A stretch of 64,000 nucleotides of DNA from Lytechinus pictus. Lineage: Eukaryota. Below the pieces are notes generated by a model. It had not been told where the DNA came from. It did no database searches and was given only the letters and a program-made list of their open reading frames with translations. This document shows positions 12,768-51,594 of the stretch, piece by piece. Numbering within the stretch: position 1 is the stretch's first letter; each line of letters opens with the position of its first letter. Both the position numbers and the translations under genes were made by a program. The stretch lies in contig NC_087249.1 in the NCBI RefSeq assembly GCF_037042905.1, positions 7,874,001 through 7,938,000 on the forward strand, in the 5' to 3' direction.

Positions 12768-12860
12768 CTCTAAAACTCGTTCCTTGGTAATAACGAAGCA
12801 ACCAAGAGCTGTCATGCCGATTTCCGGTCCGTCCAACCGAGCCAAGAATAGAAGCTGGAC
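12768..12860 (-). CDS. Gustatory receptor-like gene A, exon 3
   Basis: tttag|VQLLFLARLDGPEIGMTALGCFVITKERVLE|gtaggt. 93 nt, phase 0/0. Matches the Gr-type TAxGxFxI segment preceding TM7. Confidence 0.9.
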
Positions 12861-13541
12861 CTAAATTATAAAAATAAGAAAAACAAAGATAGCAATATAT
12901 ATTTGGTATGTTTTATAATGTGATGATATAGGACATACGCATAAACAAATGTCAACTAAAATCTAAATTAATTCGCGATCATTAACTGTACCATTCTATC
13001 AACAATATTTTCTAATTGTCTTTATTGTGAATTTGTGTCACTCAGTTACTTTCTGACATGCCAATTACTGAAAGCGTTGCTTTCTGTTAATCTCTGGAGT
13101 ATCAAAGTTATAATAACAGTCGAGAATTTAAACGCACACAGCCATGTCTGTCGATCTTAGGGGATGAGGTATATATCCTTTCCCCAATGACTTAATATGA
13201 TTATGTAAAAATGAAATTAGTCCCTTGATAGAGGAAAATAATGAAAGCAGTGAAAGTTTACCCCTTTAACAGTTTAAAATGTTCAAAGCGATGGCAGTTC
13301 ATGATTTGGGACATTGAAGGCGGAAGTACATTTATGCTCTCATTTGGTCGTTTTCTCAACATATGATGTCATCGCTTTTTAATTTTTAAGCTCACAAATT
13401 TTCAGACAACAACCTTTAAAATCAAAAGAACAAAATACAAATTGCGACATGGAACTTCTTTATAACATTGAGACAGTCATTATTCTACATTCTGCTTGAT
13501 TTTTTTTTAATTTAGTAAACTAAATGTAATATAATCTGTAC

Positions 13542-13607
13542 CTGAAATAGATCTGAGTCAAACGTGTCCATCTGTAGTTCGTGCACACGTCTGCGAAAGG
13601 AATGTGC
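13542..13607 (-). CDS. Gustatory receptor-like gene A, exon 2
   Basis: tgcag|AHSFRRRVHELQMDTFDSDLFQ|gtacag. 66 nt, phase 0/0. Paralogous exon at 32108-32173. Confidence 0.88.
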
Positions 13608-13640
13608 CTGCATTGGAAGGAAAGAACAGAAAGAAATTAA

Positions 13641-26882: not shown

Positions 26883-27020
26883 TCATGGTTCAGGAGAAGT
26901 ACGGCTGAAAGAGGGAATATTTGTTGTCATGTTCGTCGTTGCCATGGTGATATCAGTAGTAGGAGTGGTTTGTTGAAATTGGAGGAGGATGGTGAAGTAA
27001 GTGATCAACGTGCTGACAAC
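26883..27020 (-). CDS. Gustatory receptor-like gene B, exon 4 (TM7)
   Basis: tttttcag|VVSTLITYFTILLQFQQTTPTTDITMATTNMTTNIPSFSRTSPEP*. Confidence 0.92.
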   Translation of the reverse strand, partial: VVSTLITYFTILLQFQQTTPTTDITMATTNMTTNIPSFSRTSPEP

Positions 27021-27036
27021 CTGAAAAATAGAAAAA

Positions 27037-27233
27037 TGGTTCCATGACATTTGCTCCGGCGACAATATTGTCCCGCTTCAAATTCCACACATTAATGCAA
27101 TGACCAACTTCAACCCTGGATCTAACACTATACCAAAACTTAACCCTAAACCGAAACATAAAAACCTTATTGCAACCCTAACCCTATATCTTAGACGAAA
27201 TAAATTGTCGCCGGATCAAATGTCGTGACACCA
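27037..27233. mobile_element. MITE with internal CCCTAA-like repeats, next to the Grl-B exon 4 acceptor
   Basis: TIRs tggttccatgacatttgctccggcgacaat / attgtcgccggatcaaatgtcgtgacacca, flanked by gaaaaa on both sides. Confidence 0.7.
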
Positions 27234-28461
27234 GAAAAAAAAAAACCAGTGCAATATTATGTCTTATACAAGACCAAACATTCTGGGAGAGTTTTAGTTA
27301 TTGTTCATCTTGTAGAAGTCTGCCTATATTATTCTCATTTATTGCGAAAATTTCATTTCATTTCGTTTATTTCCATTTTCAACAATTAGAGTTTGTTTTG
27401 TACATTTTAACATACAAATAACAAAACATATTTCAAGTATCCCTGTACAAAAAATTATACTCAGGATTGTTACATAACAGATTGGAAATGGAGGAGGCTG
27501 CCAAAAAGCGGAGCTTGTAGAGTGCAGCCTCCTAACAAATGTGTGGATAATGTGAGATGGTGTACTGGTGTGGGTGAGGGTGTGTGTGTGTACGCGGATG
27601 TACCTGTGAACATTGAGCTGGAATATTTTTTTTTCTTCTTTTGAGACTATGAAGCGTGAACAATTATCTAAAATTGCCATTAACTGTATTTCTTGGTTAG
27701 CGAAAGTTACCCTAGTTTTGTGGTTGCGACCCAATAATTTTGTTGCATAGTCTTACAATTTATACAAAAGCAAGAGGAACAAAATAACCACCCAGTCTTT
27801 TTTAATATACCAGGCTTGGTGAAATAATCCAAAACAATGTAAATAATTTCCACTAATACTTTTTTTAGGAAACGCCATGGTTTTTATTACTTTTTTAAGT
27901 TCGAACAATAAATCTGGGCCGATACTTAGTCTGTAGTTGGCCCAATCCCCATTCAGGAAGAAACTCATTCAGCCACTTTGCTACGCGAATTCTGATTCGT
28001 GTCTGCACTGTTAAACATCACCACGTGGTTGAAAACTATCATAGAATGCTCGCCGCCGAAAGTCGACGATACTTCATGGGCAGAACTAATTGCGCATGGT
28101 CAAGCATGAGCATGCGCTGTTCTGCCCAGAAAAAAATGTGAAAAATATTTGGAGCTCTGAATGAAATTTATCCGACACACAATTTTTATTCTCAGAAAAT
28201 ACCTGAAATTCTTCCCGAGGAAAAATACAAAAAGGCAAAAAATCACCCCCCCCCAAAAAAAAAAATAATAATAATAATTTGATAGGAGAGTGCCTCAGTA
28301 GACAAAAGTATAGACTGGATTGATTAGTAGAGTAAAAATTTAGCATTATCCTTTTTAAACATGTTCTAAAAACAATTTTCGCCCTCTTCAGTATGATTTA
28401 TCGATGCAATTTCAAATGAAAACTGATTGCTGTCAAACAATAACAAAATTAAGGAACCTAC

Positions 28462-28554
28462 CGCTAAAACCCGTTCCTTAGTAATAACGAAGCAACCAAG
28501 AGCCGTCATGCCGATTTCTGGTCCGTCCAACCGGGCCAAGAATAGAAGCTGGAC
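28462..28554 (-). CDS. Gustatory receptor-like gene B, exon 3
   Basis: tttag|VQLLFLARLDGPEIGMTALGCFVITKERVLA|gtaggt. 93 nt. Confidence 0.9.
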
Positions 28555-29194
28555 CTAAATGAAAAGACGTGAAAAGATTTTTGTGTGAATATGGTACATG
28601 TACATTCACAAACGTAAAACGAAAATTTGATTTGAAAACAAAAATAAAAGATTAACAATAAAAACATGGTACCATCAAAAATATTACCTGTAATAGCCAG
28701 CCCATGCAGCCTTACAAAATATGAGAAATTTAAAATATTTTCTGATATGTTGAAAGCAAAGTCATAAAATGATATTATGGATCTCTTTTAATGAATAATG
28801 TTCTTTCATTTTTCTTCATTCATTTTGCTTGCTCATTATTAAAAAAAATTATCAGTTTGGGACAATTTTAAATATTGGACGAGAAAGATGACATAATAGG
28901 TCACTATTGATTTGGAAGTGAGGTTATCGAATACAAAATTCGAATCGTGGGCTATATGTTCAGAATATATAGAATATATGAAATTTTCCATTGGTTTGCT
29001 TTTCTCGCTCGCTTTAAAAATGTTTAATTGAAATCAAATATTTCCATGCCCATAGATTTATATTCAGTGATGAAGATACAATGGCCCTGGGAAGCGGGAC
29101 CTATATTTTGTAGTGAAAACCTTTTTTTTTACTTGTCAAATAGCACCCCCAGTAAAAAAAAATCGTTCCCACTGGCCTGAAAGATATATATATA

Positions 29195-31273: not shown

Positions 31274-32107
31274 TATATATTAGTGAAGGTATTTTGGTAC
31301 ATGGTATAGGTACAAGCATTATCAAATATGCATGTACAGTTGCTTCCCATATTCTCTTCCTAATGTGGTCTCTATACAAATTGGTCCCATGTCATGTATG
31401 TTTTATTCTAGCTTTGGTCTCTTTTTAAAGTCTTAATAGTCTTGAACCCAAAGTTGGAAGGTGAGTGCCCCGGAGGATAGGACTCGCACCATCTTAAAAA
31501 AAGATGATAAAAACTTAATGGTACCATCTGTAGATCACTGCATGGTCTATAGAAGTGTCATCATCATAATTTGCATTCATTTTCCTTGAATATCTGGCCG
31601 TCTACCTTGACACTGCCCAGCATACGGAACTGAAGTGGCTACCCTGGGTAAATATACCGTTATTATTATCATTATTATTAATAGTATTATTAATTTGTAT
31701 TATTATTATTATTATTACAATAGAATCGGTTAGTTATTTCCAAACAGTCAACATGGGACATCTTTTGTAACCACCATCCTCTTAATATTCATAAACTTAG
31801 CGTAATATGAGCCAAGCTTTTCTAAGGGAGCTAGACGAGGAAAAATTACTATAAAGCTTCGAGGGAGCGAAGCGAGCGAGCAAATTTTTTAAACCCGAAT
31901 ACAAAACTAATTTTGTGAAAGTATCTGACATAGTATTCAGAAAACGATATAATTTCCACTCCTTTTTCCTTCACCTCGATTTTTTTAGGGGCCATGTCCG
32001 CCAAGCCCCCCCCCCCCTTCACCTGTACGCCAGTAATATTCATTATAGTACATTCAGCGTGAAAAAAAGTTGTAGAATTAAAATAGTGAAGTTATTACAT
32101 TTAGTAC

Positions 32108-32173
32108 CTGAGATAGATCTGAGTCAAACGTGTCCATCTGTAGTTCGTGCACACGTCTGCGTAGGGAATGAGC
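32108..32173 (-). CDS. Gustatory receptor-like gene B, exon 2
   Basis: tgcag|AHSLRRRVHELQMDTFDSDLSQ|gtacta. 66 nt. Confidence 0.88.
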
Positions 32174-32238
32174 CTGCATGGGAAAGAGAGAACAGCCACA
32201 AACAATTTGCAAAATTTGTTTCTTCTCTTTTCGCGACT

Positions 32239-32405
32239 AATACCTCAGTCACATTTTCTCTAGGGCGGCCGTAAGGTGAGTCGAAAACAGCCGTTTTACT
32301 CATCTTCATTCGAACCACCTGTATGTAGCTATTACAAACAAAATGTTAAAACAGTTGATTCGACTCGCCGTACAGCCACCATTTTGCAAATGTGACTGAG
32401 GTATT
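32239..32405. mobile_element. Small MITE in Grl-B intron 1
   Basis: TIRs aatacctcagtcacattt / aaatgtgactgaggtatt. Confidence 0.7.
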
Positions 32406-32667
32406 CAACTAGTAAGGCTACTGAAAACCCAAAATATTTTAATGAAAGGATGCATAAGTTGTTCTAAAAAACAATTACCTCGTATATATTGAAAATATTA
32501 AAATTCGAAACATTTACAACGTTTAAAAAAATAACTATTAATGACTTGCTTCTATATGATTTACATTCTTTTATGAATGGAAAAAGGGTAGGCCTAATAG
32601 AATCTAAATAATAATAAATTATTGTATAGCTCAAACATAGGAACCGGCTCCAAAGTAATTATATTAC

Positions 32668-33798
32668 CTTTTCATATACTTGCACTGCGAAAAGGGACGG
32701 CAATAACACATTGGTGGAACAGACGAGGAGCCAACAGAGCGTCATACTGATGTACAATAGGTTTCCATTAGCAAGATAAAAGAGCTCATACAACAGAAAG
32801 ATAATGAGTGGAATGTTCGTCAAGTACACGACTCCCACAAAAGGAGAGAATACATCATCAGCAACCTCGACAGTGTGGCAAATAACAGCATGTCTTCGCC
32901 GAAAACAATTCAGTGTCTTTTTATCAATCGGGTGGGAAGAGTTGAGAGCCTGGTCGAATTCCTCTGACAAATTTTCAAATTGCAACGAAATGTTGTGACA
33001 TATGAGCGAGAAAAGAGCACCCGGAAATGCATAAGCAGCATTTGAATAAACTGCGAATATCAAATTAATGCCGCAAAATGGCTCTGAAAGCCACGGTCCA
33101 CAGATGCCCATTGAAGTCAGCGGGTTTAGTCCGAAGCCAAATGTTGAGAATACCATACCGGCAATGTTGATAAGCATGACACAAGTACATGTTACCGTTA
33201 CAAGCATAGCCCATTTGTTGTATCTTACGGGAGTTTTGTGCTGATTCTCATTAATTTCGTCTTTCGTGTTTAGGGTCGTTTTGTCCAATGAGCAATGTGT
33301 TCGTCTTGTTTGAAGGGACGTGACCGAAGAGTTCCAATGACGCCGGAAGTAGGGCATGCATTTGTCCCTGTAACACACTACGAACATGATGGTATTGCAG
33401 ATAGATACGATGTAAAAGTACACTTGCATTGTTATCAGTTCTTGCGAGAATATTCCGTACCTGTCATTCAGAGCAATAGCATATGTCATCCGGATCGTAT
33501 TCAGCCACAGGTATATACACACCAAAGCGTGGTATACTCGAGAAATACCATTCCGCCAACTCTTCGACCTAGGTGGCTCAGGATCAGCATCAGGAAACCA
33601 TCCTGAACCTTCAGCCTGGCCCTGAGTTTTGAGGGCGCCCTCGAAAGCTGTTTCGTGATAGACTCCAACGATCTTCAAAGTCAAAAGAAGGGGTTCTAAC
33701 ATCTCATTCCAAAGAAGATTTACTTTCACATCATTCCTTGGAGGTTGATCTTGTTTTGTTGCAGATTCCATCTTCCCAATAACAGCAATACGATTCAT
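32668..33798 (-). CDS. Gustatory receptor-like gene B, exon 1 (377 aa; full model 475 aa: 33798-32668, 32173-32108, 28554-28462, 27020-26883)
   Basis: Paralog of 19210-20337. Ends VYEK|gtaata (phase 0). Confidence 0.92.
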
Positions 33799-34650
33799 TT
33801 TAGAAGCTATTTTCTCTTTCTTCGAGAAATATGGGAGTAGTATAAAGCCTATACTCTATGGATCTGTTTCAAATAATGCAGACGAATCGACTAGCTGAGC
33901 TGTTCATGGCTTAAGTCGAACCTTTTCGATAAAACCCCGCGACGGCTACCGACAAACAGACAATTACTACTCACACCCTAAATGCTAAATGGCACCTCGT
34001 CAATGTTATGCAACGCAAAATCATAACAGGAGTTAATCATCTTAAGTGACTGTTTACTAATCACTGGCAATTGTTCCAAATTAGTTACCACACTTTAATG
34101 GTAAAATTAATTTAGATAATTGTGAGAGAGCTAATGTAGGCCTATTTGTTTTGTATGAATAGATAGTTGATAGGGATGATACTCCTGCAGGAGTTTGTTG
34201 ACAGTGTAAAAGAATGAATTGTTTGTGTGTTCTTCTACCCCCCCCCCCTCTCTCTCTCTCTGTATGATCATATGAAAACGCATTCAAATCGCACTGACAG
34301 AATACAGGGATAGAGAGAGCCGAATCAGGGGGAAGGGGATGCGGGAGAATAGGGAAAGAGGGTGAGTGAGAGAGGGAGAGAGAGAGAAGGGGGGGGGGGA
34401 GAGGAGAGCCTTGGAGAGGGAATGCAATTGAAATTGATTGCATAAATCTTCTTCGTTTACGTCAATAAAACGTATTCATAGAGATCCTAGCCATTTGTTT
34501 TTATCATTCTTCATTTTATCAGTTACCCCTTTTCGTTTTTTTTAAAGCGGTCTTTGATTACTTAAAGAATTAAGAATCCAATTTTGAGCTCCAGTATACA
34601 AATAATGAATGTTTATGAGTGCAATGGACATAATACTTCATGGGGTGACA

Positions 34651-37511
34651 CATGGGCGAAATCTCTCCTTAAACATGTTAAAGGTAGGGGGGACACAATT
34701 GACTTTTCCGTTTTTTTCCGTTTTTAAGTNNNNNNNNNNNNNNNNNNNNNNNNNNNNNNNNNNNNNNNNNNNNNNNNNNNNNNNNNNNNNNNNNNNNNNN
34801 NNNNNNNNNNNNNNNNNNNNNNNNNNNNNNNNNNNNNNNNNNNNNNNNNNNNNNNNNNNNNNNNNNNATTTCGAAGAGGGGAGGTATTCCTAACTAAAGA
34901 TGAAAGGCCTCAATAAATAATGCAAGCGCGAAGCGCGAGCCCAAATATGTCGATATTTTATAAATTGTGACCTGGAAATTGAACATTCTGAACGTTTTTT
35001 GTGATCATGAACTAAATTCGAACCTACCTAAACCATTAATGCGAGCACGAAGTGCGAGCTGAAAGTTTTTGATTTTCCAACCTAAAAACTGGGCATTCTT
35101 AACACTTTTTCAAATCATGAACAGGATATGAATTACCTAAAACTGAACATTCGTAACACTTTTTCAAATCATGAACAGAATAGGAATTTAACTAAATCAT
35201 AGATGCGAGCGCGAGCTGAAAGTTTTTGATGATTTTCCCATCTAAAAACTGAACATTCTTAACAGTTTTATAAAAATCATGATCAGGATAGGAATCTAAT
35301 AAAACAATGCTAGCGCGAAGCGCGAGCTGAAAGTTTTTTTTATTTTCCAACCTAAAAACTGGACATTCGTAACACTTTTTTCAAATCATGAACAGGATAG
35401 GAATTTAACTAAATAATAGCTGCAAGCTGAAAATGTTTGATTTTCCTACCTAAATACTGGACATTCATAGCACTTAAAAAATAATATGAACGGAATAAGA
35501 ATCTAAACAATGAATGAAAGCGCGAGCTGAAAAGGTTTTTGATTTTCCAACCTAACAACTGGACATTCTTAGTACTTAAAAAAAATCATGAACAGGAAAG
35601 GAATCTAAACAATTAATGCGAGCGTGAAGCACGAGCTGAAAGATTTTGATTTTCCAACCTAAAAACTGGACATTCTTAGCACTTAATAATGAACGGAATA
35701 AGAATCAAAACAATGAATGCGAGCGCGAAGCGCGAGCTGAAAGGATTTTTGATTTTCCAACCTAAAAACTGGACATTCTTAGTACTTAAAAAAAATTATG
35801 AACAGGAAAGGAATCTAAACAATTAATGCGGGCGTGAAGCACGAGCTGAAAGTTTTTGATTTTCCAACCTAAAAACTGGACATTCTTAGCACTTAATAAT
35901 GAACGGAATAGGAATCTAAACAATGAATGCGAGCGCGAAGCGCGAGCTGAAAGGGTTTTTGATTTTCCAACCTAACAACTGGACATTCTTAGTACTTAAA
36001 AAAAAATTATGAACAGGAAAGGAATCTAAACAATTAATGCGGGCGCGAAGCGCGAGCTGAAAGTTTGTTATTTTCCAACCTAAAAACTGGACAATCGTAA
36101 CACTTTTTCAAATCATAAACAGGATAGGAATCTTACTAAACAATATTAGATTCGAGCGCGAAGTGTGTGCTGAAGATATGTCATTTCCGGCCTACAAAAT
36201 TGGTATTATTAGCATATTTTAAATCAAGGACAGGGTGGCTATCTAACTAAATTTTAATTGATATGAGCGTGAAGCGTATCCTGATTTTTTTCAATTTTCC
36301 GACCAAAAAAGGCATCTTCTTTTCACCTTATAGCAATAAAACAGGATAATATCTGACCCAACCATATTACCGATGCGAGCGCGAAGCGCGAAATGAATTT
36401 TATTTATATTCGGATCTGAAAACTGGATCTTTCAAGCACTTTTGAAATAAAGAACAAGCAGTCTATCTCAATAAACAATGCGAGCGCAAAGCGCGAGCTA
36501 ATTTTTTTTCTTTAAGATTTAAACCTACAAATTATGAAAAAGATGGATATCTTCCTAAATAAATGATTTGATTTTATATATTTCGATCTTAAAAGTGAAA
36601 GAAAAAAATTTAAGCACGTTTTGAAAGAAGAGATGGCTGTGTATTAATGCGAAGCGCGAGCGATTTTTTTATTTTTTTTACACAATGACCTGAAAGTTTT
36701 ATTTTTTCCGATTATTCCCCTCCCCTTCCATCATTTGATTGTCTTCCTCGTCCTATCTTTCTTCTTATTTTTCTCCTCACCTTCCCATTTTGCGCCGCCA
36801 ATAGGAGGCGGGCAGCCGCTTCGTCCCCTTGATCTACCTATAATGACCCCTCCCACGTACGGCAGGAATTTCGTGTAAAAATGGAATATAAAAGTCTCGT
36901 TAATAGAGTATTTAAAAACAAATTTTGGGGGATTAAACAAAGGTATGTTTTTACGGGGTATGGAACATTCTCGTCTACCATCTATACACTAAATTTACTT
37001 ATAAGTATCCAGGGGCGATTTTCTGTTTTCGTCATTTTCATTAGTTATGAAATTGACAATGGGCATCGAAGTCAGCAATGTCATCACTCTTTGGCTGACA
37101 TATAGGGCTAGATGCGAGTTCGGGAATAGTCGGGCCGGTATGCCTTTTCTTTTCCTATCCAACTGAAAGAGGGTCACTTATATTTCACATTTTTATAAAT
37201 ATATCCAATGATTTTTGTGATGTGAGATTTTCATGACGGCATTTTAATATTGTAACTGTTATACCCATACTATTTTCAGGTATCAACATTGATTTTTTTT
37301 TAACAGGGAGCGATGTTATATTTTGCCTTTAACAAAAACTCTTTGTTTATATTTATTTCGAAATTCGAGGATACATGTGTATAATTTCGATTTTGAATTA
37401 TGTATTTTGATCCATAATAAAATACCACAAATAGTGGGGGGACATTTGATATTACGTACCCCCTTTCCAAAATGGTAGGGGGACGCGTCCCCCCTGGGAT
37501 TTCCGCCCATG
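34651..37511. mobile_element. Non-autonomous hAT-like element carrying an internal tandem array of about 115-120 bp units
   Basis: Ends catgggcgaaatc / gatttccgcccatg. Flanks gggtgaca / aggtgacg (degenerate 8-bp TSD). Array units contain gcgagcgcgaagcgcgagctgaaa...ttttccaacctaaaaactggacattc. Confidence 0.6.
34730..34867. other. Assembly gap
   Basis: Run of N. Confidence 1.
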
Positions 37512-40500: not shown

Positions 40501-42005
40501 GAGGGTCACTTATATTTCACATTTTTATAAATATATCCAATGATTTTTGTGATGTGAGATTTTCATGACGGCATTTTAATATTGTAACTGTTATACCCAT
40601 ACTATTTTCAGGTATCAACATTGATTTTTTTTTAACAGGGAGCGATGTTATATTTTGCCTTTAACAAAAACTCTTTGTTTATATTTATTTCGAAATTCGA
40701 GGATGCATGTGTATAATTTCGATTTTGAATTATGTATTTTGATCCATAATAAAATACCACAAATAGTGGGGGGACATTTGATATTACGTACCCCCTTTCC
40801 AAAATGGTAGGGGGACGCGTCCCCCCTGGGATTTCCGCCCATGAGGTGACGGATGAATGGGCCATTCAACGAGTCGCAGCGGAGTTGAATTGATCATTTA
40901 TTTCATCTTTCACCGAATGAGTATTCTGTCCATTGCACGAATATTTGATTTATATGACACCTAAAAATAGATTCTTGTAATTTACAGATTTGAATGCAAA
41001 AGTGCATTTAGTGCGAACGCGTTCTGTTGACTGTCGCATACATACAACAAAATCGTATGGATAAAAAATTGCACGGATTATGACGTCATTGTAAATTGTG
41101 CTGAATGATCGACATCGAACAACCAATCAAATGACAAGGAACTATCTAGGTGTCATATAATGACATATAAACACGGAGCTTCAACATGCTCAAGTATCAA
41201 CACGGCAAACTCTGGATCATGCCGGCATGATCCAAGGAAGTCCGGGATAATTTTGCTCCGAATTTAGCGTCGAAGAGCGTTGTTCACGCGGTATCAACGC
41301 GGCATTAACACGATGTTTACATGTATCTACAGAGACCATGCCTGCAGAGCACGTCGTCGACACCATGTACACGGACCGTCACACAGTGGGCCAGAATGAG
41401 TTGAAAGTGCGCCAAAATTATATTCCGTGTTATATGTTTACCTTAACATGTTGGTTATGGGTAATTTTGGGCGTAGAATCGACTGAACATAATTTAAAGC
41501 CGATATGACGTCACTTTGATACCAAATTATGATTGGCTACTTAAAACCTATCTGTGAAAAGACAAATTGCAGTATATAAACAAAGTGCAGTATATAAACT
41601 TTGTGTTATGTGTTACTTTAAGATTGACCAGACATGTCAGAGTGAATGTTGGTTCATGCTTCTCACATGCCTAAAAAGTGTGTACGAGATCCTGAAAATA
41701 ATTTTATGGCATCAAAATGATCATTATATTTTCAAAATCTGAAAATATTAACCGTGCTTTATCATGTTTATCAAGCGGTGCAGACTTGGGTAAAACGCAC
41801 CACGAATGGTTTACTATGAGGAGGGTTTTGGGCTGAAATTATTCTACAAGTAACTTTTATCTATGGAAGAGGGGCGGGTAGCCCTTATATGCGTTACCAA
41901 CCTTTATTTTGGTTGCATTATGCCCGGAATTCATGTCATTTTCATGGAATGAAAGGGGAATCGTCCTCGCCGTGCAAAAATGAACGGCATTGTACACCCA
42001 CACGG
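35343..42005. repeat. Near-identical tandem duplication, period 3332 bp (35343-38673 and 38675-42005)
   Basis: Identical ORF-track hits offset by 3332 (e.g. 36881/40213, 38222/41554). Only a few substitutions seen. Confidence 0.95.
38050..38673. mobile_element. Truncated left half of the Transib-like element (product of the tandem duplication)
   Basis: cgtca|CACAGTGGGCCAGAATGAG..., matching 41382-42005 and cut at the duplication junction. Confidence 0.8.
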
Positions 42006-42588
42006 TGCGCTGCGATGACTGCGCGGTATAAAATTGACCGTTTTGAACCGGTTTTGGGGGTGTTAATGTCAAGTAAAATCGGCTCTAACATAAAAACGGG
42101 CAGCTAAATTTGGTATCGACTGGTATCGACTTAAAGCTTGGACATCTGGCAAAATGATGATGATAGAATTTAAATGGAAATCCAAACGTTTCTAATGTAA
42201 ATGCAAAAAACATGGATTATCAGCCTATTTCGAGGAATAATTACCCTGTAAACCTCCTGAAATGTGTCTTTTTTCTAACTTGAACCCTTTCACACGAAAA
42301 AAGAATATATCAGGATTATGTGGGTGCCATTTCAGATTCCTACATGAAAAACCTCCTGTGAAATGGCCTGTTTTACAACTAAGTTGTCATATACGCGGCA
42401 TTTCGCAAAATGTCACATTTTACGATTTGAGGTAGGAAATTAACAACCTTTATGCAAAATCCCGAATGAAATATTTTGCTGAAGTATTCTTCAAAGTGTT
42501 GTCTTTCAGCTGGGCATGACAAAAATTAAAAACTGAAATTGCCCAATATGACTTTTGGCGCACTTTTGTTTCGCCCCGGCCCACTGTG
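41382..42588. mobile_element. Non-autonomous Transib-like DNA transposon with RSS-like terminal inverted repeats
   Basis: Both ends begin CACAGTGGGCC and share AAAGTGCGCCAAAA at the same spacing. Perfect 5-bp TSD CGTCA (41377-81, 42589-93). 1207 bp with no transposase ORF. Confidence 0.85.
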
Positions 42589-42973
42589 CGTCAGTGCGTC
42601 CGCACGGACTAATTAACAAAAGAGAGGAAAGGTCCATGCGAGTGTGTTAACTTTTGTCTTAGTCTTAATTGGACTTGATCTGATACTCTGAATGCCATGT
42701 AGTTGAGTTGAACATTACATATAAACCTCTGGGAGACATGTGGATTTAATTTTATGTGAAGGATCTCGCCAAATCATTGAATTTTCACCTTCTCTTGAAT
42801 GAGCAGATTGTCTTTGACCTGTATGTGTGGAAATTGTGGTCCCAAATATAATACTATCTGTGAGTAACATGTGACAAAGTGTACTTTCACTTTCAATTAT
42901 TCCACCTCTTTTTCTTCATCCACGGAGCTTACATTCTTCCCTTCTCTCCTTCACTGCGGTCTTCAGCAACATC

Positions 42974-43717
42974 ATGCCGTCAACACGTCAAGATTCTTCT
43001 GCTGGAAGTAGTCTTGCTCCAGACTTTTCTGATGTCCACGATATCATTAAAAAAATATTTTGTGAAGATGATTTTGTGTCCGCGTTGGAGAGGAGCATTG
43101 AGAAAGTTCTCTCAAAGCGCCAGCGAGAGTTTGAGGAGAGGATAGAGAGGCAGGAAGGTGAAATCCATGATCTACAAGTAGCATTGAATCAAAAGGAGGC
43201 TGAGATCCACTCAATCACCACTTCCATGAAGAAGCTGGAAAGCAGAGTAGAGGCTTACGAGGGTAAGAGCAACGAGCTAGAGCAGTATAGTAGGAGGAAC
43301 TCTGTTCGGGTGTTTGGTGTGCCAGAGTCATCAACAGAGTCTACGGACAACCTGGTGATGAAGGTGGCAACAGATCGCCTTGGCTGCCCGATAAGCAAGG
43401 CTGACATCGAGAGATCACATCGATCGGGAAAGCCCCGCTCTGACAGAAAGCCTCGGCCTATCCTGGTCAAGCTCTGCTCCCATCGAGTGAAGGCTGCACT
43501 GATGAAGGATCGCCGTAAATTGAAGGGGTCAGGTATCTCCATCCAGGAGGACCTAACAAAGTTAAATCATCAAATTCTCATGAAATTGTCCTCCCATCCA
43601 AAAGTCGAAGCGGCTTGGTCAACTGATGGGAGAGTCATGGCTGCCCTCAAGACCAACCAAGAGGGAATCCAAGTTAAGAGGTCCTTCTCATCACTGCAAC
43701 AAGTCTCTTCTTTATAA
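42974..43717 (+). CDS. LINE ORF1 (coiled coil plus L1-ORF1-like RRM/CTD), 247 aa
   Basis: Heptad-rich E/K region, then LEQYSRRNSVRVFGVPE, IERSHR, PRPILVKL, IQEDLT, AWSTDGRV. Confidence 0.9.
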   Translation: MPSTRQDSSAGSSLAPDFSDVHDIIKKIFCEDDFVSALERSIEKVLSKRQREFEERIERQEGEIHDLQVALNQKEAEIHSITTSMKKLESRVEAYEGKSNELEQYSRRNSVRVFGVPESSTESTDNLVMKVATDRLGCPISKADIERSHRSGKPRSDRKPRPILVKLCSHRVKAALMKDRRKLKGSGISIQEDLTKLNHQILMKLSSHPKVEAAWSTDGRVMAALKTNQEGIQVKRSFSSLQQVSSL

Positions 43718-44130
43718 CTTCCAACTTTTGTGTTTAACTTTATTTCCACTGTTACCTCTCTCAGGGGTTTACCTTTTAACTGTAACTTGAACATTACTTC
43801 ACCCTTTTTCTGATTTCCACTTATTTTCTTAGTTTCTTTTATCATTCTTTTCTTCCCGCTTTTTTGTCTAACTTGTGTCTCGTTGTATATTTATAATGTC
43901 ATTTGCTCTTGCATTTGCTTTTCTTCTATATACTATGTACATACCTGTATATATTCATCATATAGTTGTTAATGTGTCTGTGTGTGTGTCTGTGAATATG
44001 TGTAATGGCTGTCCTCAGATTTCCATGTTTCATCCACCCTTGTTGATATTTTATATTTGTTTGGTCTGTGACGGATATGGTTTAATAAATGCTGTATTGG
44101 TTTATTGTTTGCTTGTTGAAATCTCTCCTC

Positions 44131-47080
44131 ATGGATGACGGATTTAATATTCCAGAACCGGTTATTAATGAGTGTAAATACATAAACTGTGAAGATTTCC
44201 AATGTAATGGTGAAAACTTTTCCGTTATGCATATTAATTCGAGAAGTCTCTTTAAAAATTTTGAAGATTTGGCGGTCTTGTTATCATGTATAAATCATAA
44301 TTTTTCTGTGATTGGTGTTTCAGAAACCTGGTTTACTCCATCCACAGAAGTAGCTATGTTTGATATTCCTGGATATTCACTTGTTCAAGTATGTCGATCA
44401 AATAAAAAAAGGTGGTGGTGTAGCATGTTATGTCAGAGAGGGGCTTGATTACAAATTACGCAATGATTTATCAACGGCAAATACTTATTATGAGTCTGTA
44501 TTTATTGAATTGAATAATGCAAACAAAAAGTCAATTGTTGGTTGTGTGTATAGAGCCCCTGGCAATGATATTCGATCATTTACTGATGACTTTGACCAAG
44601 AAATGCAAATATTGAGTAAAGAAAATAAGGACATTTATATTATGGGTGATTTTAACATTAACTTGTTAAATGCTGATACAGATGAAAAGGTTAGAGATTT
44701 TAATAATTTCATGTGTTCATTTGGCTTGTTTTCCCTAATCACTAAACCTACACGCATAACATCATCTTCAGCAACCTTAATTGATAATATATTTACCAAT
44801 TGTGTTCAATATCAATTCTGCTCTGGAATATTTTGTTCTGATTTTTCTGATCATATGCCGATTTGTAGCATTAACAAAGGCAATGCCATTACTTCTAGTG
44901 AAACAAAAAGAAAAGTGTTCAGACGTCTAATTACTGAAGTAAGAATGAATTACTTTAGACAAGATTTACTTAACACAGATTGGTCTGTTTTATATGATTT
45001 GTTTGACGCTAATGTGTCGTTTAACTATTTTAGTGACATTTTTTCTCAGTTATACAATGAACATTTCCCTTTAATTAAATGCAGTGGTAAGAATAAATGC
45101 AGGAAACCATGGATTACTCCAGTTCTTCTATAATCCATTCATAAAAAGCAGAAGCTTTACTATGCATATATAAAAAATAAAAACGAAATTAATAGGAAAA
45201 AGTATATTGATTACAAAAATACATTGACAAATCTTGTTCGTCAAAGTAAGAAGAATTATTATGATAATGTTTTTCGAACAAATCAAAATGATATGAGGAA
45301 GACTTGGTCCCATATCAATGAATTGCTTGGGAGGGGGAAGAAAACGCCACTCCCAAATGACATGTATCATAACGAATCGTTGTTAAATTCAGATCTACAT
45401 AAAGCTGAGTATTTTAATAAATATTTTATTGATCTACCTTCTAAAATAAGCAAGAAAATTCCTTCTGTCCAATCGTCATACAGAGATTTTATGTCGGTCC
45501 AAAATCACTCCTCATCCTTGTATTTTCGACCAACATCTGTTTGTGAAATTTCTAATTTGGTTTCGACTTTAAAACCATCGAAGGCATGCGGGTCAGATGA
45601 TGTTTCTCCCAAGGTCATAAAAAATTGTATTCAATGCATTGTTGATCCCTTATGCGATATTTTTAATAAGTCCTTGTTTCAGGGTATTGTCCCTGACAAA
45701 CTGAAAATAGCTAGAGTAGTCCCAGTATTTAAAAAGAATGATCGTAAATGCATTGAAAATTACAGACCTATTGCGTTGTTACCCATATTCTCAAAAATTC
45801 TTGAGAAAATAGTGTACAAAAGAATGGATGATTTCCTTCAACTTCATAACATAATGATACCACAACAATTTGGATTTCGAAAGAATTACTCCACAAGTAT
45901 GGGCGTCTTGAATTTAGTAAATACCATTATAAGTGCAATTGATAGTGGAAAATTTTGTATTGGTGTGTTTCTTGATTTATCGAAAGCATTTGATACTATC
46001 GATCATGATATATTATTGTACAAGCTTGAGCATTATGGTGTTCGTGGGGTAGCCTTAAGTTGGTTCAAAAATTACTTAACGAATAGATGTCAGTATGTAA
46101 CGATTAATGGAGTTAAATCACAATCTAAGGAGGTTAAATGTGGTGTACCCCAAGGCTCGGTTCTGGGTCCCTTATTGTTCTTGATTTATGTTAATGACAT
46201 TATAAATTCATCAAAATTGTTTACTTATTCACTATTCGCAGATGACACTTGCTTACTTTCCCATCACAAAGATATGGAAACTCTCATACTCTCAACTAAC
46301 AATGAAATTAAAAATATATTTAAATGGTTTTGCTGTAACAAGCTTTTATTAAATGCTAGTAAAACTCAATATATTGTCTTTAGAACAAGGGGTAAACGAG
46401 TCCCTGAAGATACTAATCCATTATCAATAGGAGGCCATCAGATCAATCGAAGTCAAGATGTAAGGTTTTTGGGAGTTGTAGTTGATGATCACTTATCATG
46501 GAAAAATCACCTCAGTTATGTTTGTACTAAGGTATCAAGGAGCGTTGGTGTCATTTATAAATTACGTTTCTCTCTCCCTCAGCAGACCTTAGTAACTCTT
46601 TACAATGCTATTATTATGCCACACTTAAATTATTGTAATGTTGCATGGGGAAATACATATAGGAACCATTTAAACAAACTGCTAGTTCTTCAGAAGAAAG
46701 TTATGAGGCTCATGACATATTCGAATTACAGATGTCCAAGTATTCCTTTATTTCTGCAATTGAAGATTTTGCCTCTTGATGATTTAGTCTCCCTCAATTG
46801 CTTGATATCTATGTACAAATCACAATCCTCTCAAAACTGTTCATTTTTAAAAGATGCATTTGTTGTTAACTCAAATGTCCATTTGTACAATACACGGCAG
46901 AAAAATCTTATCCACCAGCCACTTGCAAGAACAAATACTGCTTTGAATTCTTTTGTGATAGTTTGTACAAAAGAATGGAATAAGTTACCACAAAACTTTA
47001 GATCCAGTCCAACACTGCCCATATTTAAAATTTCATGTCGAAAATATTTATTTGAAAGATTACAAAATATCTTAAATTGA
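44131..47080 (+). pseudogene. LINE ORF2 (EN plus RT) with one frameshift and one premature stop
   Basis: +1 frameshift in the A-run at about 44404-44410 (CRSNKK/GGGV). In-frame TAA at 45131-45133. Otherwise continuous EN and RT motifs. Confidence 0.92.
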
Positions 47081-47734
47081 TTCTTGATAAACCATGTGTG
47101 TTGTGTGTGTGTGTGTGTGTGCGTGTTGTGTTTGTATGTATTTTCTTATTTTACTCTTTAGATTATCATTGTAAATATTTTTTTCATCTCATTATTGTTG
47201 TAATGTACTTTATAAGGGGCCCCTCTCACAAGCTCTGCTTCTATGGGGTCCCAAACCTATCATGCATTCTCATTTTTGTTAAACTATGTGATATGTCTCT
47301 TGTTCTTGATTGGTTTGAATAAATTTGAACTTTGAACTTGAACACGGCAGCTCCACGACGAACAGGGAAACTATACATGAACAATTCAGGATTGCTCTGC
47401 AAACACGGCAATTCACGGATGACGCCCGATGGTTTTTACTTTCCAAAGACAGTTGTTCATGCCTCTCGGACGTTCATGGACCTTCATGAACCAACGATGC
47501 CCAGGCACAGAGGTGGAAAAAATGTGCCCAAGGCGTCTATCTCTTCCCGGTCGCGAAATTATTTTTCCCACCGAGTTCTGGACCAACATATGAATATTCA
47601 TGACTTGCGTCTTCGGATTAAGAGTACGCATGCGCGTGGACTTTGCCTCGACCATGTACCAGAGCCGGTCGTAAGCATTCACGTTCAGTTGCTCAGAATT
47701 AATTAGCATCGTCAAATTACCGGTAACCTTACAT

Positions 47735-47868
47735 NNNNNNNNNNNNNNNNNNNNNNNNNNNNNNNNNNNNNNNNNNNNNNNNNNNNNNNNNNNNNNNNNN
47801 NNNNNNNNNNNNNNNNNNNNNNNNNNNNNNNNNNNNNNNNNNNNNNNNNNNNNNNNNNNNNNNNNNNN
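47735..47868. other. Assembly gap
   Basis: Run of N. Confidence 1.
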
Positions 47869-48739
47869 CTAGCTGGCAAGACATGTGCTAGGCTAGAGCT
47901 CGCTTAGGCTAGCGCATTAACTTTACCTCAAATCTGGACCTGTCTAATGACGATAATAAATTTGACATCTGACTGCAATTTTGACAACAATTTTCATACT
48001 TTAAACATAGCTAACTCTAAAAAACGATAACAATCCATTAGGATCAGTGACGTACCTAGGATTTTCCACAGGGGGGGGCAAATCCGTCCGCCAAAAAATT
48101 TGACAAGCAAAAAAAAGAAGAAAAAAGTTTTTCACCCAAAATGTAAGGTCATTTAGTCCAAAAGGTATTATTTCGATTGTGAAGTGATGAATTCTTCACA
48201 ATGAAAGACCAAAAATAGTAGGGGGACATTTTATATTGTATCCCCCTACTATTTTTGGTAGGGGGACACATACCCCTGTCCCCTCTGGGATTTCCGCCCA
48301 TGTGGGTTGAAGATGTCACATCCCCACTATCCTGTTTCTTGTGTTATTACATGGAATCAAAATTGTTTCATTTTTTCATACCAGTGTGAATGATATGTCT
48401 CCCTTATAATGAAATAAGTTGCAGCAAAGAATATCTAATAGACTAAATCAGTTGTCAATTCAACTGTTTTTGGTTCTTGAAGGGAAAATATTAAATAAAC
48501 CTAATTTTATATAATAAAATACAAAAGAACAAGTGGGGATATGACATCATCAGTTTGCTCATTGAATATTAATGAAGACATGCTTAAAACTGTTTCACCG
48601 GAATAATGCTAATCTTTAAAATACAATAACTTTGATATTCCTTGTAGGATTTTGATCAAATCTTTATTCTCATGTTCGTCTGATTTATCTTTATCTGTTC
48701 AAACCATATTACCTTCAGTGTGGAGTTTCAGATCAGAAT

Positions 48740-49490
48740 ATCAAAAATTTTCTGCTCGCGCTTCGCGCTCACATTATTAATGTAATAATATATAAAATTA
48801 CCTATAATTTTCTTGATTTACAAAACATGAATAGAATGTCCCAATAAAATTATAGGTCTGAAATCTCAATTTTGTTTCCGCTCGCGCTTTGCGCTCGCAT
48901 CGATTGTATAGTTATATACCTATCCTGTTAGTCATGATTAGAAAAGTGCTTAAGATGTCCTGTTTTTAGGTCTGAAATCTCATTTTTATTTCCGCTCGCG
49001 CTTCGCGCTCGCATCAATTGTATAGTTATGTACCTATCCTCTTCATTATTAGAAAAGTGCTTAGAATGTCTCGTTTTTGGTCTGAAATCTCAATTTTGTT
49101 TCCGCTCGCGCTTCGCGCTCGCATCAATTGTATAGTTATATACCTATCCTGTTCATGATTGCGAAAAGTGCTTAGAATGTCCAGTATTTAGGTCGGAATG
49201 TTAGATTTTTCAGCTCGCGCTTCGCGCTCGCATTATTTGATTGTTGATATATGTATCGTCTTAATGGGTAACTGCAAACAGTCCTTATATCACTTCCCTT
49301 TCGATCAGACCAGAGCGTATACAAAAAATATCTGCTCGCACTGGTCACATTCGCAGTTATTATTTGTTACATATACATCTTGTTCAGGACCACAAACATC
49401 GCTCAAAATGTTCAATTTTTCTGAACAAAATACATGAAATTTCCCCCCCCCAAAAAAAAAAAAATAGCTCGCGCTTCGCGCTCGAGTTAT
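48740..49490 (-). repeat. Tandem units of the gcgagcgcgaagcgcgagc repeat family (reverse orientation)
   Basis: Repeated gctcgcgcttcgcgctcgcat...aaaagtgcttagaatgtcc units. The same family occurs at 34920-36660, 54130-54620 and 60670-61130. Confidence 0.8.
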
Positions 49491-50478
49491 CTAATTATAT
49501 ATCTATGTTCTTTTATAAGAAGAATGAAGTGACTGTCATATATATGTCTGTATATATATATGTGTGTGGTGAGGGTGTGTGTGGTGCCCTTAGAGGTGTG
49601 TGTGTAATTATGGAAAATTCAATTGTGTCCCCCCCCCCCACCTTCGAGGAGAGATTTCAGCACCCCCACTGAAAAAATCGTTCCCAGGTCCCTGGGTTAC
49701 CGGTAATTTGACGATGCTAATTCATTCCACGCGCATGCGTACTCTTAATCCGAAGACGCAAGTCATGAATATTCATATATTGGTCCAGAACTCGGTGGGA
49801 AAAATAATTTCGCTTCCCGGTCACTCCGGATCTGGTCCGGCGTGTAAATCTGACTGATCTGGATTGATCAGGGGGAGATATCCGGACATAGATTTTGAAC
49901 TAAATGAGTAAAGGTATAAGTTTTATACGTTTCGGTGTATATTTTCAGTGTACAACATGGTACAAAGAGGAGAGTTGTATACTTCTGTGACATCACAGAT
50001 CTTGGTTGCATTGTCGATTGGAGTACCTCTGTAGCATAAGTGATTTCGACATGCCAAATGCTCATAACTTTCTTATTGCTTGTCCAATTGTTCTCAAATG
50101 TCCATTCATTTCATTCTTTAATTTTCCTTTTTCATACGCTCTAACTCCTTTGAAATACTGAGATTTGGAGACAGTGATTAATGTGTGAAAGGAGCCATTT
50201 AGTAATTTTAATAGGCAATGGGTGATTTCAAGTTCAGTGTTGACCTGTTGGTGTTAGGTCAACTTTTCCACGATTATAACACCAAACATAAAATGAAGAT
50301 GGTCCCGAAAAGTCATTCACTAGTAGTTGAGATGTCAATAATGTGATCTGGATCAGTTTTACAAACTCTGAATAAGTTTTGGAGCAAGAGGAAGCGATCC
50401 AAATTTCAACTTCAACACCAAGGCCAACACCGGACTTGAAAACACTCATTGCCCTCGACTCCGATGTATTCGTTTTAC

Positions 50479-51594
50479 CTTGTCATGAACTCGCACTGTG
50501 AAAAAGGACAGCAGTAAGACAGTGGTGGAACAGCTAAACAGCCAGAAAAGCGTCAGACCAGTGAAGATTAAGTCACCGTCAGCAATATAAAAGAGCTGAT
50601 ACAACAGAAAAATGATGAGCGGAATGTTCGTCGAGTAAATAACGCCTATAAGAGGAGAGAATACATCATCAGCAACCTCGACAGTGTGGCAAATAACAGC
50701 GTGTCTTCGCCGAAAACAATTCAGTGTCATTTTATCAATCGGATGGGGAGAGTTGAGAGCCTGGTCGAATTCTTCCGACAGGTTGTTGAATTGCAACGAA
50801 ATGTTATGACATATGAGGGAATAAAGAGCGCCCGGGAATATGTACGCAGTAGTTGCATAAACTGCGAAAATCAAGTTGATGCCGCAAAATAGCTCTGTAA
50901 GCCAAGGTCCGCAGACTCCACTTGAACTCAGCGGGTTTAGTCCTCCGAAGCCAAATGTCAAGAAAATCATAGTAGCAACGTTGAAAAGTGTCATACAAAT
51001 ACAAGTTATCGTTACAAATACAGCCGATTTGGTGTACTGTTTAGGATTCCCATGTAAGTTTTCTGCCTTTGTGTTGAGGGTTCTATCGAATGAGCATTGT
51101 GTTCGTCTTGTGTTAAGGAATGTAACCGAAGAGTTCCAATGACGATGGAACAAGGGCATTCCTTTTTCCCTGTAACACACTGCGAACATGATGGTATTGC
51201 ATATAGAAACGACGTAAAAGTAAACTTGCAATGTTATCTGATCGTACCTGACACTGAGAGAAATAACGTAGGTCATCCGAATCGCATTCAGCCACAGGTA
51301 TATACACACGAAGGCGTGATATACCCGAGAAAGGCCATTCCGCCAGCTCCTCGACCATGTCGACCTCGGTGGCTCAGGATCAGCATCAGGAAACCACCCT
51401 GAACCTTCAGTCTGGTCCTGGGTTCTGAGGGCGCCCTTGAAAGCTGTTTCGTGATAGACTCCGACGATCTTCAAAACCAGAAGGAGGGGTTCCAACATCT
51501 CATTCCAAAGAAGATTTACTTTCACATCATTCCTTGGAGGTTGATCTTGTTTGGTTGCAGAGTCCATCTTCCCAATAACAGAAATGCGATTCAT
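50479..51594 (-). CDS. Gustatory receptor-like exon 1C (372 aa, intact); no dedicated exons 2-4 visible
   Basis: Third paralog of the long first exon. Open frame from ATG to VHDK|gtaaaa (phase-0 donor). Confidence 0.88.

What the first reader, a model, noticed from the sequence alone, without database searches (positions are those of the whole stretch)
26883..51594. Three variable first exons but only two sets of constant 3' exons: candidate alternative-promoter splicing onto a shared pore module
Seen: exon 1C (50479-51594) is intact from ATG to a phase-0 donor at the same codon as in A and B (HDK/YEK/HEK|gtaa). I find no homolog of exons 2, 3 or 4 between 50479 and 33798, where the sequence is mostly transposon or duplication. 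The two gaps there are only about 135 nt each, and one sits inside a hAT-like element. Established: Drosophila Gr28b, Gr39a and Gr23a splice alternative long first exons onto shared short 3' exons encoding TM7. Inference: 1C splices about 18.3 kb to exon 2B, skipping exon 1B. This would give receptors with different ligand-binding parts and an identical pore/assembly helix. I know of no description of this architecture for non-arthropod Grls. Matching phases also permit 1B or 1C to splice to exon 2A.
Basis: partly seen in the sequence, partly recalled or inferred. Interest (0 to 1): 0.9.

Follow-up and report, generated by a model that had tools for sequence, protein, structure and literature searches.

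The report
Sea-urchin taste-receptor gene with alternative first exons
A sea-urchin relative of insect taste receptors has two different large first exons in front of a single set of small pore-encoding exons, the layout known from fly Gr28b and Gr39a, and it is conserved and under selection in two urchin species, but no RNA yet shows the splice.

Summary
The window is Lytechinus pictus chromosomal DNA. It carries three intact paralogous Gr-like first exons on the minus strand: 1A 19210-20337, 1B 32668-33798 and 1C 50479-51594. Only two sets of the three small phase-0 exons that encode TM7 are present.

No third set is detectable between 1C and 1B. The gap-free orthologous interval in L. variegatus (3.3 kb) also has none. 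Both L. pictus gaps lie in insertions that L. variegatus lacks at those sites.

Exon 1C is open in both species, keeps an identical donor, and has dN/dS 0.33, the same as 1A and 1B. NCBI already models the L. variegatus ortholog as isoform X2 (1C-type exon plus the B module). That product folds as a complete insect-type GR/OR channel subunit.

The pattern extends upstream of the window, where five more intact first exons precede one constant module.

The weak point is RNA. Three RNA-seq runs gave no reads on 1C, without a positive control.

Verdict: most likely a real Gr28b/Gr39a-type variable/constant locus in a deuterostome. This is a new member of a known kind, and splicing is inferred, not shown.

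The parts
50479..51594 (-). Variable first exon 1C (372 codons, ATG at 51594, phase-0 donor AAG|GTAAAA after 50479). Encodes the N-terminus through most of TM6.
   Evidence: Open ORF. 7tm_7 profile positions 18-288 of 370, 24 bits. Ortholog in L. variegatus is 88% identical in protein with an identical donor. dN/dS 0.33, p=7e-6.
51595..51860 (-). 5' flank of 1C, homologous to the 5' flanks of 1A and 1B. Candidate own promoter or 5' UTR.
   Evidence: Six-sequence alignment of about 265 nt upstream of each ATG in both species shows shared blocks among paralogs.
32174..50478 (-). Proposed 18.3-kb intron for the 1C isoform. It contains exon 1B, an antisense LINE, a TIR element, a tandem duplication, satellites and two assembly gaps.
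   Evidence: Colinear with the gap-free L. variegatus interval; the extra DNA is L. pictus-specific. No exon 2-4 homolog. TE content.
47546..49820 (.). Element bounded by 95-nt terminal inverted repeats (96% complementary). It contains assembly gap 47735-47868 and is absent at the orthologous L. variegatus site.
   Evidence: RNA reads from other copies pile up on its ends.
34650..37507 (.). L. pictus-specific insertion containing assembly gap 34730-34867 and a satellite array.
   Evidence: L. variegatus L001 12874-13250 and 13240-13899 abut at a single point, whereas their L. pictus counterparts are 2.9 kb apart. Satellite.
32668..33798 (-). Variable first exon 1B (377 codons), donor AAG|GTAATA.
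   Evidence: Identical to exon 1 of XP_054754495.2. dN/dS 0.36.
32108..32173 (-). Constant exon 2B (22 codons, phase 0/0). First acceptor downstream of both 1C and 1B.
28462..28554 (-). Constant exon 3B (31 codons, phase 0/0). Carries the helix before TM7 and the start of TM7.
   Evidence: Helix map.
26883..27020 (-). Constant exon 4B (45 codons plus stop). Encodes TM7 with the motif TYFTILLQF.
19210..20337 (-). First exon 1A of the neighbouring single-first-exon gene.
12496..13607 (-). Constant module A (exons 2A 13542-13607, 3A 12768-12860, 4A 12496-12606).
   Evidence: Matches XP protein P0005.

Best explanation
Exons 1C and 1B are alternative, promoter-linked first exons of one Gr-like (7TM ion-channel) gene. 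Each encodes the N-terminus and TM1-TM6, the variable and presumably ligand-facing part. Each ends in a phase-0 donor.

Transcripts that start at 1C would splice 18.3 kb to the first available acceptor, exon 2B, with 1B removed as part of the intron. Transcripts that start at 1B would splice 0.5 kb to the same acceptor. Both would then share exons 2B-4B, which supply the end of TM6, the cytoplasmic helix before TM7, and TM7 with the TYhhhhhQF motif.

Shown here:
- the anatomy;
- its conservation in a gap-free sister-species locus;
- purifying selection on 1C;
- a complete GR/OR fold for the joined product.

Inferred:
- the splice itself;
- separate promoters;
- the pore and assembly role of the constant module, which rests on analogy with solved insect OR/GR tetramers.
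For: 1. Only two constant modules exist for three first exons.

2. The L. variegatus locus L001 has no N. It reads 1C' 10001-11110, 1B' 14396-15526, exon 2 from 16002, exon 3 from 18811, exon 4 from 24423. Nothing exon-2-4-like lies in the 3.3 kb between 1C' and 1B'.

3. The interval is colinear between species, and both L. pictus gaps sit in insertions absent from L. variegatus.

4. 1C is open in both species. dN/dS is 0.33 (CI 0.20-0.52, p=7e-6), against 0.31 for 1A and 0.36 for 1B. Simulated neutral substitution alone keeps the ORF open in both lineages with p about 0.008.

5. Ortholog pairs group with 100% bootstrap, and 1C is closer to its ortholog than to either paralog in six of seven sliding windows (0.92-0.96 against 0.74-0.88). 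In the first window its identity to Lp1A equals that to Lv1C (0.93). Recent gene conversion therefore does not explain the conservation of most of the exon.

6. The donor and the first 14 intron bases are identical in the two species. The read-through tail is not conserved: a stop after 10 codons in L. pictus, but more than 70 in L. variegatus.

7. NCBI isoforms X1 and X2 of LOC121415159 share one 3' end.

8. X2 passes 7tm_7 (45.8 against a cutoff of 26.6 bits, profile 37-369 of 370), whereas exon 1C alone scores 24 bits. Its model has pLDDT 82.8. All 24 top PDB matches are insect GR, OR or Orco, with target-normalised TM 0.60-0.74.

9. Each first exon carries a homologous 5' flank.

10. The same layout recurs upstream: five first exons before one module, also seen in L. 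variegatus.
Against: There is no RNA support. Three rRNA-depleted RNA-seq runs labelled as the same species as the best DNA holder of exon 1B gave zero depth over 50524-51611. About 6% of each run was read, roughly 8 million reads each.

No indexed RNA run holds 1C.

NCBI's L. pictus annotation treats 1C as a separate 382-aa read-through protein, not an isoform. It treats the analogous L. variegatus exon 1E' the same way. The automatic models are therefore inconsistent, and I could not see what evidence underlies X2.

The true gap sizes are unknown.
Confidence: 0.65

Rival explanations
1. 1C is expressed only as the annotated read-through product: a stand-alone protein with six transmembrane helices and no TM7. 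It would act on its own or as a modulator.
For: NCBI's L. pictus annotation has exactly this 382-aa model (P0001). Purifying selection on 1C would also fit a functional truncated protein.
Against: The tail after the donor is not conserved: 10 codons in L. pictus, more than 70 in L. variegatus. The donor itself is identical in both species. Exon 1C alone falls below the Pfam cutoff and lacks the TM7 segment. Such models are what a pipeline produces when it cannot reach distant 3' exons; L. variegatus 1E' has the same form.
Confidence: 0.08
2. 1C is a dead relic of a partial duplication or of a deletion that removed its own 3' exons. It is not used.
For: No RNA reads in three runs. No own module.
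Against: dN/dS is 0.33 with p=7e-6, equal to the working paralogs. The ORF is open in two species, with p about 0.008 under neutrality even ignoring indels. Length differences are in frame, and the donor and 5' flank are conserved. No conversion from paralogs across most of the exon.
Confidence: 0.07
3. A third exon 2-4 set exists but lies entirely inside one of the two assembly gaps.
For: Gap lengths are only estimates. A full module can be as short as 1.1 kb, as in gene A.
Against: The gap-free L. variegatus interval has no such module. Both gaps lie inside L. pictus-specific insertions, one of them a TIR-bounded repeat element. No exon of a third set is visible on any gap flank.
Confidence: 0.03
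4. 1C splices somewhere else: to the distal A module (exon 2A), or to an unrecognised non-homologous exon.
For: All donors and acceptors are phase 0, so 1C to 2A would stay in frame.
Against: The first compatible acceptor and the first terminal exon downstream of 1C belong to module B. The L. variegatus model uses module B. Conserved blocks in the 1C-1B interval are 83-91% identical, which is the neutral level (dS 0.11-0.14), so no hidden constrained exon stands out.
Confidence: 0.07

Closest known systems
Drosophila Gr39a (also Gr28b and Gr23a) alternatively spliced gustatory receptor loci
   Same: Several large 5' exons in tandem, each encoding six TM domains and ending in a GT donor. They are followed by three small shared exons that encode TM7 and the C-terminus. 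The first acceptor appears only at the start of the small-exon block. The large exons are under purifying selection, and the small exons under much stronger constraint (PMC2204066). Here the layout is a large exon plus three small phase-0 exons, with dN/dS about 0.33 against about 0.05-0.08.
   Different: The host is a deuterostome (echinoid), not an arthropod. The fly isoforms are shown by cDNA and expression data, whereas splicing here is inferred. The urchin introns are far larger (18 kb, TE-filled). The first exons are recent (after the Strongylocentrotus split) for B and C, and old for D-H.
NCBI Gnomon model LOC121415159 isoforms X1 and X2 of Lytechinus variegatus (XP_041464229.1, XP_041464230.1)
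   Same: This is the direct ortholog. X2 is the 1C-type exon joined to the module that X1 (1B-type) also uses, with the same 3' end.
   Different: It is an automatic model in another species, and its evidence is not visible to me. The L. pictus annotation does not contain the equivalent isoform.
Animal Gr-like (GRL) genes as described for sea urchin, hemichordates, cnidarians and others (Robertson 2015; Saina et al. 2015, as cited in PMC7746228)
   Same: [quoted passage not shown]
   Different: I found no description of alternative first exons for these non-arthropod genes in the searchable library. The two primary papers are not held, so I could not check them.
Variable-exon/constant-exon loci such as clustered protocadherins and UGT1A (my own knowledge)
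   Same: An array of promoter-linked variable first exons is spliced to shared constant exons.
   Different: These are unrelated proteins. Promoter choice is not tested here.

Membership tests
Insect-type gustatory receptor / GRL (7TM ion channel) superfamily | Significant match to the 7tm_7 / Trehalose_recp profiles | tested here: met
   The joined product P0002 scores 45.8 bits on 7tm_7 (cutoff 26.6) and 45.2 bits on Trehalose_recp (cutoff 21). Exon 1C alone scores 24 bits, below the cutoff. The family profile hits solved Gr64a at E 1.4e-20.
Insect-type gustatory receptor / GRL (7TM ion channel) superfamily | TM7 motif TYhhhhhQF | tested here: met
   TYFTILLQF is present in exon 4 of modules A, B and D.
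Insect-type gustatory receptor / GRL (7TM ion channel) superfamily | [quoted passage not shown] | tested here: inconclusive
   Three phase-0 introns lie in the last 98 codons. I did not align their positions with those of insect or cnidarian genes.
Insect-type gustatory receptor / GRL (7TM ion channel) superfamily | OR/GR/Orco-like fold | tested here: met
   AF2 model pLDDT 82.8, pTM 0.83. The top 24 PDB matches are all insect GR, OR or Orco, with target-normalised TM 0.60-0.74.
Gr28b/Gr39a-type alternatively spliced chemoreceptor locus | Two or more large tandem 5' exons on one strand, each encoding TM1-6 and ending in a same-phase donor | tested here: met
   1C and 1B both end in a phase-0 AAG|GTAA donor at the homologous codon.
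Gr28b/Gr39a-type alternatively spliced chemoreceptor locus | A single downstream block of small exons encoding TM7, with none between the large exons | tested here: met
   in L. pictus. The gap-free L. variegatus locus agrees. Sensitivity was calibrated.
Gr28b/Gr39a-type alternatively spliced chemoreceptor locus | Each large exon kept by purifying selection | tested here: met
   dN/dS is 0.33 for 1C and 0.36 for 1B.
Gr28b/Gr39a-type alternatively spliced chemoreceptor locus | Transcripts that join each large exon to the shared small exons | tested here: inconclusive
   No reads on 1C in three RNA runs, with no positive control. No RNA run in the index holds 1C. Only the L. variegatus gene model supports the junction.
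Gr28b/Gr39a-type alternatively spliced chemoreceptor locus | No functional acceptor in front of the internal large exon (mutually exclusive use) | not tested
   1B starts with its own ATG and a 5' flank homologous to those of 1A and 1C. Acceptor strength was not scored.

The most novel reading that the evidence does not exclude
The whole Gr-like cluster of about 120 kb would be a variable/constant array: eight promoter-linked first exons served by three constant TM7 modules ([H G F E D], [C B], [A]). It would have been kept in this form since before the L. pictus / L. variegatus split. This would be the first such chemoreceptor locus outside arthropods. It would imply either that the conserved 3' phase-0 introns repeatedly predispose GR/GRL genes to this architecture, or that the architecture is ancestral to Bilateria.
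Probability: 0.5. Interest if true: 0.65.

Novelty: new member of a known kind. Interest (0 to 1): 0.55.

Why it matters
If the splice is real, receptor diversification by swapping the TM1-6 part onto a fixed TM7 (pore and assembly) module is not an arthropod speciality. It would also occur in a deuterostome, in a family whose non-arthropod members have almost no functional data.

It gives a concrete and cheap test, because the junctions are diagnostic: exons 2A and 2B differ at two codons. It also offers a natural pair of isoforms for asking what the variable part senses.

It flags systematic annotation errors. Orphan first exons are called as truncated read-through proteins in both Lytechinus annotations.

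Tried and rejected
- RNA test. Runs X17-X19 (raw RNA-seq) and X1 (contigs, kind only guessed) were laid on 49300-53350. There was no depth on the body of exon 1C. All laid reads were partial hits to repeats (49708-50523, 52292-52563, 52972-53350). One X1 contig at 50689-50857 (depth 3) cannot be counted, because X1 may be DNA. This is no evidence for silence.

- Run searches. No indexed run on record as RNA holds 1C or 1B.

- MITE check. A 76% match between 14022-14188 (just upstream of exon 2A) and 49963-50133 (just downstream of 1C) looked like a possible remnant of a lost C intron. I rejected this. It is a foldback or MITE-like repeat (inverted copies 13637-13840 and 14026-14229), and in L. 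variegatus it sits at a different place, downstream of exon 2.

- hAT identity of the element around gap 47735-47868. No Pfam hit in its ORFs. Only the long inverted repeats are confirmed.

- Recent origin of module D by duplication from A or B. Rejected, because dS is about 1-1.6. The high protein identity of exon 3 reflects constraint.

- S. purpuratus. The ortholog of A, B and C is a single first exon with its own module, so the B/C arrangement is not older than the Lytechinus lineage. LOC105439903 isoforms X1 and X2 are the ortholog of the unlinked C3 gene and differ only slightly.

- Two ENA contigs with tandem same-strand ORFs of about 355 aa gave no DNA.

- Literature. Five searches found no paper on alternative first exons in non-arthropod GRLs. 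Robertson 2015 and Saina 2015 are not held.


Full report
**What the window is.** Protein searches place the window in Lytechinus pictus, on a 57.47-Mb chromosome (G000:C5:7874001-7938000). GC content is 36%. There are three N runs: 12025-12190, 34730-34867 and 47735-47868.

**The observation.** Three paralogous large ORFs lie on the minus strand.
- They are 81-84% identical to one another in DNA. BLAST homology stops about 20-60 nt outside the ORFs.
- All end at the homologous codon, followed by GT. 1C (50479-51594) ends ..VHDK|gtaaaa. 1B (32668-33798) ends ..VYEK|gtaata. 1A (19210-20337) ends ..VHEK|gtaaaa.
- Sensitive blastn found the three small exons twice only. Set A is 13542-13607, 12768-12860 and 12496-12606. 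Set B is 32108-32173, 28462-28554 and 26883-27020. All junctions are phase 0, and exon 4 carries TYFTILLQF.
- Between 33799 and 50478, blastn (word 7), tblastn (word 2, E up to 200) and nhmmer --max with exon profiles gave only noise.
- This search is sensitive enough. The unlinked Gr-like gene on contig C3 has a first exon only 26% identical and an exon 3 only 40% identical. Its own exons 2 and 3 were still found at E of 1e-4 to 1e-6, and its exon 4 more weakly (E about 0.1), all within 3.4 kb.

**The gaps.** I did not try to fill them. I used the sister species instead.
- The best annotated relative of 1C is L. variegatus XP_041464230.1, 'LOC121415159 isoform X2' (88% identical).
- Its locus (L001, 34.5 kb) contains no N.
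- It reads 1C' 10001-11110, 1B' 14396-15526, exon 2 from 16002, exon 3 from 18811, exon 4 from 24423, then 1A' from 31708.
- The 3.3 kb between 1C' and 1B' has no exon 2-4 homolog.
- The interval is colinear with window 50478-33799. L. pictus is longer because of insertions.
- One insertion is 47525-49812. It coincides with an element bounded by 95-nt inverted repeats (47546-49820) and contains gap 47735-47868.
- Another is an antisense LINE (42974-47080).
- A third is a 3.3-kb tandem duplication at 99.9% identity (35343-42005).
- A fourth is 34650-37507, which contains a satellite and gap 34730-34867.
- Both gaps are therefore inside DNA that L. variegatus lacks at those sites. Neither touches an exon, so reading frame across them is not an issue.
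- A hidden third module remains possible in principle but is unlikely.

**Is 1C alive?** Several tests say yes.
- 1C is open in both species (372 and 370 codons, with in-frame length differences).
- The donor and the next 14 intron bases are identical.
- Nei-Gojobori dN/dS between the orthologs is 0.33 (bootstrap 95% interval 0.20-0.52; Fisher p=7e-6). This is indistinguishable from 1A (0.31) and 1B (0.36).
- Neutral substitution alone would leave the ORF open in both lineages in about 0.8% of simulations.
- In a codon tree rooted with S. purpuratus, each ortholog pair has 100% bootstrap. A, B and C form a near-trichotomy that postdates the Strongylocentrotus split.
- In sliding windows, 1C is closer to its ortholog (0.92-0.96) than to any paralog (0.74-0.88) in six of seven windows. 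In the first window, identity to 1A equals identity to the ortholog (0.93). Recent conversion from 1A or 1B therefore does not explain the conservation of most of the exon.
- The peptide that read-through into the intron would add is not conserved: 10 codons in L. pictus and more than 70 in L. variegatus.
- About 265 nt upstream of each ATG is homologous among the three paralogs in both species. Each first exon was therefore copied together with its proximal 5' flank.

**What the joined product would be.**
- Exon 1C alone covers 7tm_7 profile positions 18-288 of 370 and stays below the Pfam cutoff (24 against 26.6 bits).
- The L. variegatus X2 protein covers positions 37-369 and scores 45.8 bits.
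- A profile of 46 relatives hits solved Gr64a at E 1.4e-20, and also hits Orco, MhOR5, Gr43a and BmGr9.
- The AlphaFold model of X2 has pLDDT 82.8 and pTM 0.83, with confidence mostly above 90 (one block at 82) across the exon junctions.
- Its 24 best PDB matches are all insect GR, OR or Orco chains, with target-normalised TM 0.60-0.74.
- Mapping the exon borders (370/371, 392/393, 423/424) on the model gives this division. Exon 1 ends inside the long helix 340-380. Exons 2 and 3 give helix 388-401. Exons 3 and 4 give helix 418-439, which carries TYFTILLQF.
- The constant module evolves much more slowly than the first exons. dN/dS is about 0.05 between species and about 0.08 between modules A and B.
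- Its role as pore and assembly helix rests on analogy with the solved insect channels. It was not tested here.

**The pattern is wider than the finding.**
- The genome has nine matches to 1C. Five more lie just upstream of the window on the same strand.
- In the gap-free 70 kb C5:7938001-8008000, five intact first exons all end at the homologous codon plus GT. They are 1D 7953518-7954555, 1E 7957545-7958603, 1F 7987733-7988767, 1G 7991003-7992037 and 1H 7993892-7994908.
- Only one set of exons 2-4 is found there (from 7949290, 7948553 and 7942021).
- L. variegatus has the same order, 1F'-1E'-1D', with no constant exon between them in a gap-free locus.
- dN/dS is 0.37 for 1D and 0.36 for 1F. 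For 1E it is 0.71, not significantly below 1.
- More distant urchin sequences contain intact relatives of 1E and 1H.
- Module D is old relative to modules A and B (dS about 1-1.6), although exon 3 is 93% identical in protein.
- The cluster thus reads [H G F E D] to module D, [C B] to module B, and [A] to module A.
- S. purpuratus has a single first exon with its own module at the A/B/C position.

**RNA.**
- No indexed run on record as RNA holds 1C or 1B.
- Three 2026 rRNA-depleted RNA-seq runs, labelled as the same species as the best DNA holder of 1B, were laid on 49300-53350. About 6% of each was read, roughly 8 million reads. They gave zero depth on exon 1C. All reads that laid were partial hits on repeats.
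- The tissue is unknown, and I had no second call to check 1B or 1A. This is absence of evidence only.
- NCBI's L. pictus annotation calls 1C a 382-aa read-through protein. The L. variegatus annotation does the same for 1E' while joining 1C' to module B as isoform X2.
- The models are inconsistent, and I could not see their supporting evidence.

**Comparison with what is known.**
[quoted passage not shown] Donors sit on every large exon, and the first acceptor is at the small-exon block. Gr28b and Gr23a are built alike (PMC2204066).
- The urchin locus matches this feature by feature, except that transcripts have not been shown.
- Animal GRLs are defined by the TM7 motif and conserved 3' introns (PMC7746228).
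- I found no paper describing alternative first exons in a non-arthropod GRL. The two primary GRL surveys are not in the library.

**Verdict.** The reading of alternative first exons on a shared TM7 module is the best explanation (about 0.65). It rests on comparative and evolutionary evidence plus an existing automatic model in the sister species. The junction itself remains to be shown. It is a new member of a known kind of locus in a new phylum, of moderate interest.

Noticed in passing
G000:C5:7941920-7994908 (would be window 67920-120908; loci L003-L008): Five more intact Gr-like first exons (1D-1H) sit on the minus strand with only one set of exons 2-4 downstream. L. variegatus has the same order, 1F'-1E'-1D' (L013). 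The variable/constant layout appears to be general for this cluster.
   Followed up: partly
window 7661-8803 (+) and 62379-63410 (+): Two intronless rhodopsin-type GPCR ORFs (7tm_1, E 5e-28 and 4e-34) flank the Gr-like genes on the opposite strand.
   Followed up: no
window 21279-24281 (+), 17110-18438 (+), 42974-47080 (+): LINE elements. One has an uninterrupted 1000-aa endonuclease+RT ORF between genes B and A. One RT fragment lies in intron 1 of gene A. One ORF1/EN/RT copy lies in the proposed 1C intron.
   Followed up: partly
window 35343-38673 and 38675-42005: A 3.3-kb direct tandem duplication at 99.9% identity lies inside the 1C-1B interval. It is either a very recent duplication or an assembly artefact.
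   Followed up: no
window 13637-14229, 49963-50133; L001 16920-17496: A foldback or MITE-like repeat with inverted halves occurs in different introns of the A and B/C loci in the two species, so it is mobile.
   Followed up: partly
window 53381-54006 and 55077-55436; 35134-36214; 48850-49262: Satellite arrays. The first two are in inverted orientation relative to each other.
   Followed up: no
first ~300 nt of exons 1A, 1B and 1C (window 20038-20337, 33499-33798, 51295-51594): The 5' end of the first exons is much more alike among paralogs (0.89-0.93) than the middle (0.74-0.79). This suggests either constraint on the N-terminus or past gene conversion together with the shared 5' flank.
   Followed up: no
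public annotations (P0001, P0015, P0006): Orphan first exons are annotated as truncated read-through proteins: L. pictus 1C at 382 aa and L. variegatus 1E' at 371 aa. An older L. pictus model (XP_054755852.1) fuses exons 1B-3B to an unrelated downstream gene that is not in this window.
   Followed up: partly
ENA sample ERZ26222911, two contigs: Relatives of these first exons sit next to further same-strand ORFs of 354-391 aa at 2.6-7 kb spacing. This may be the same tandem-first-exon layout in another echinoderm. No DNA was available.
   Followed up: no
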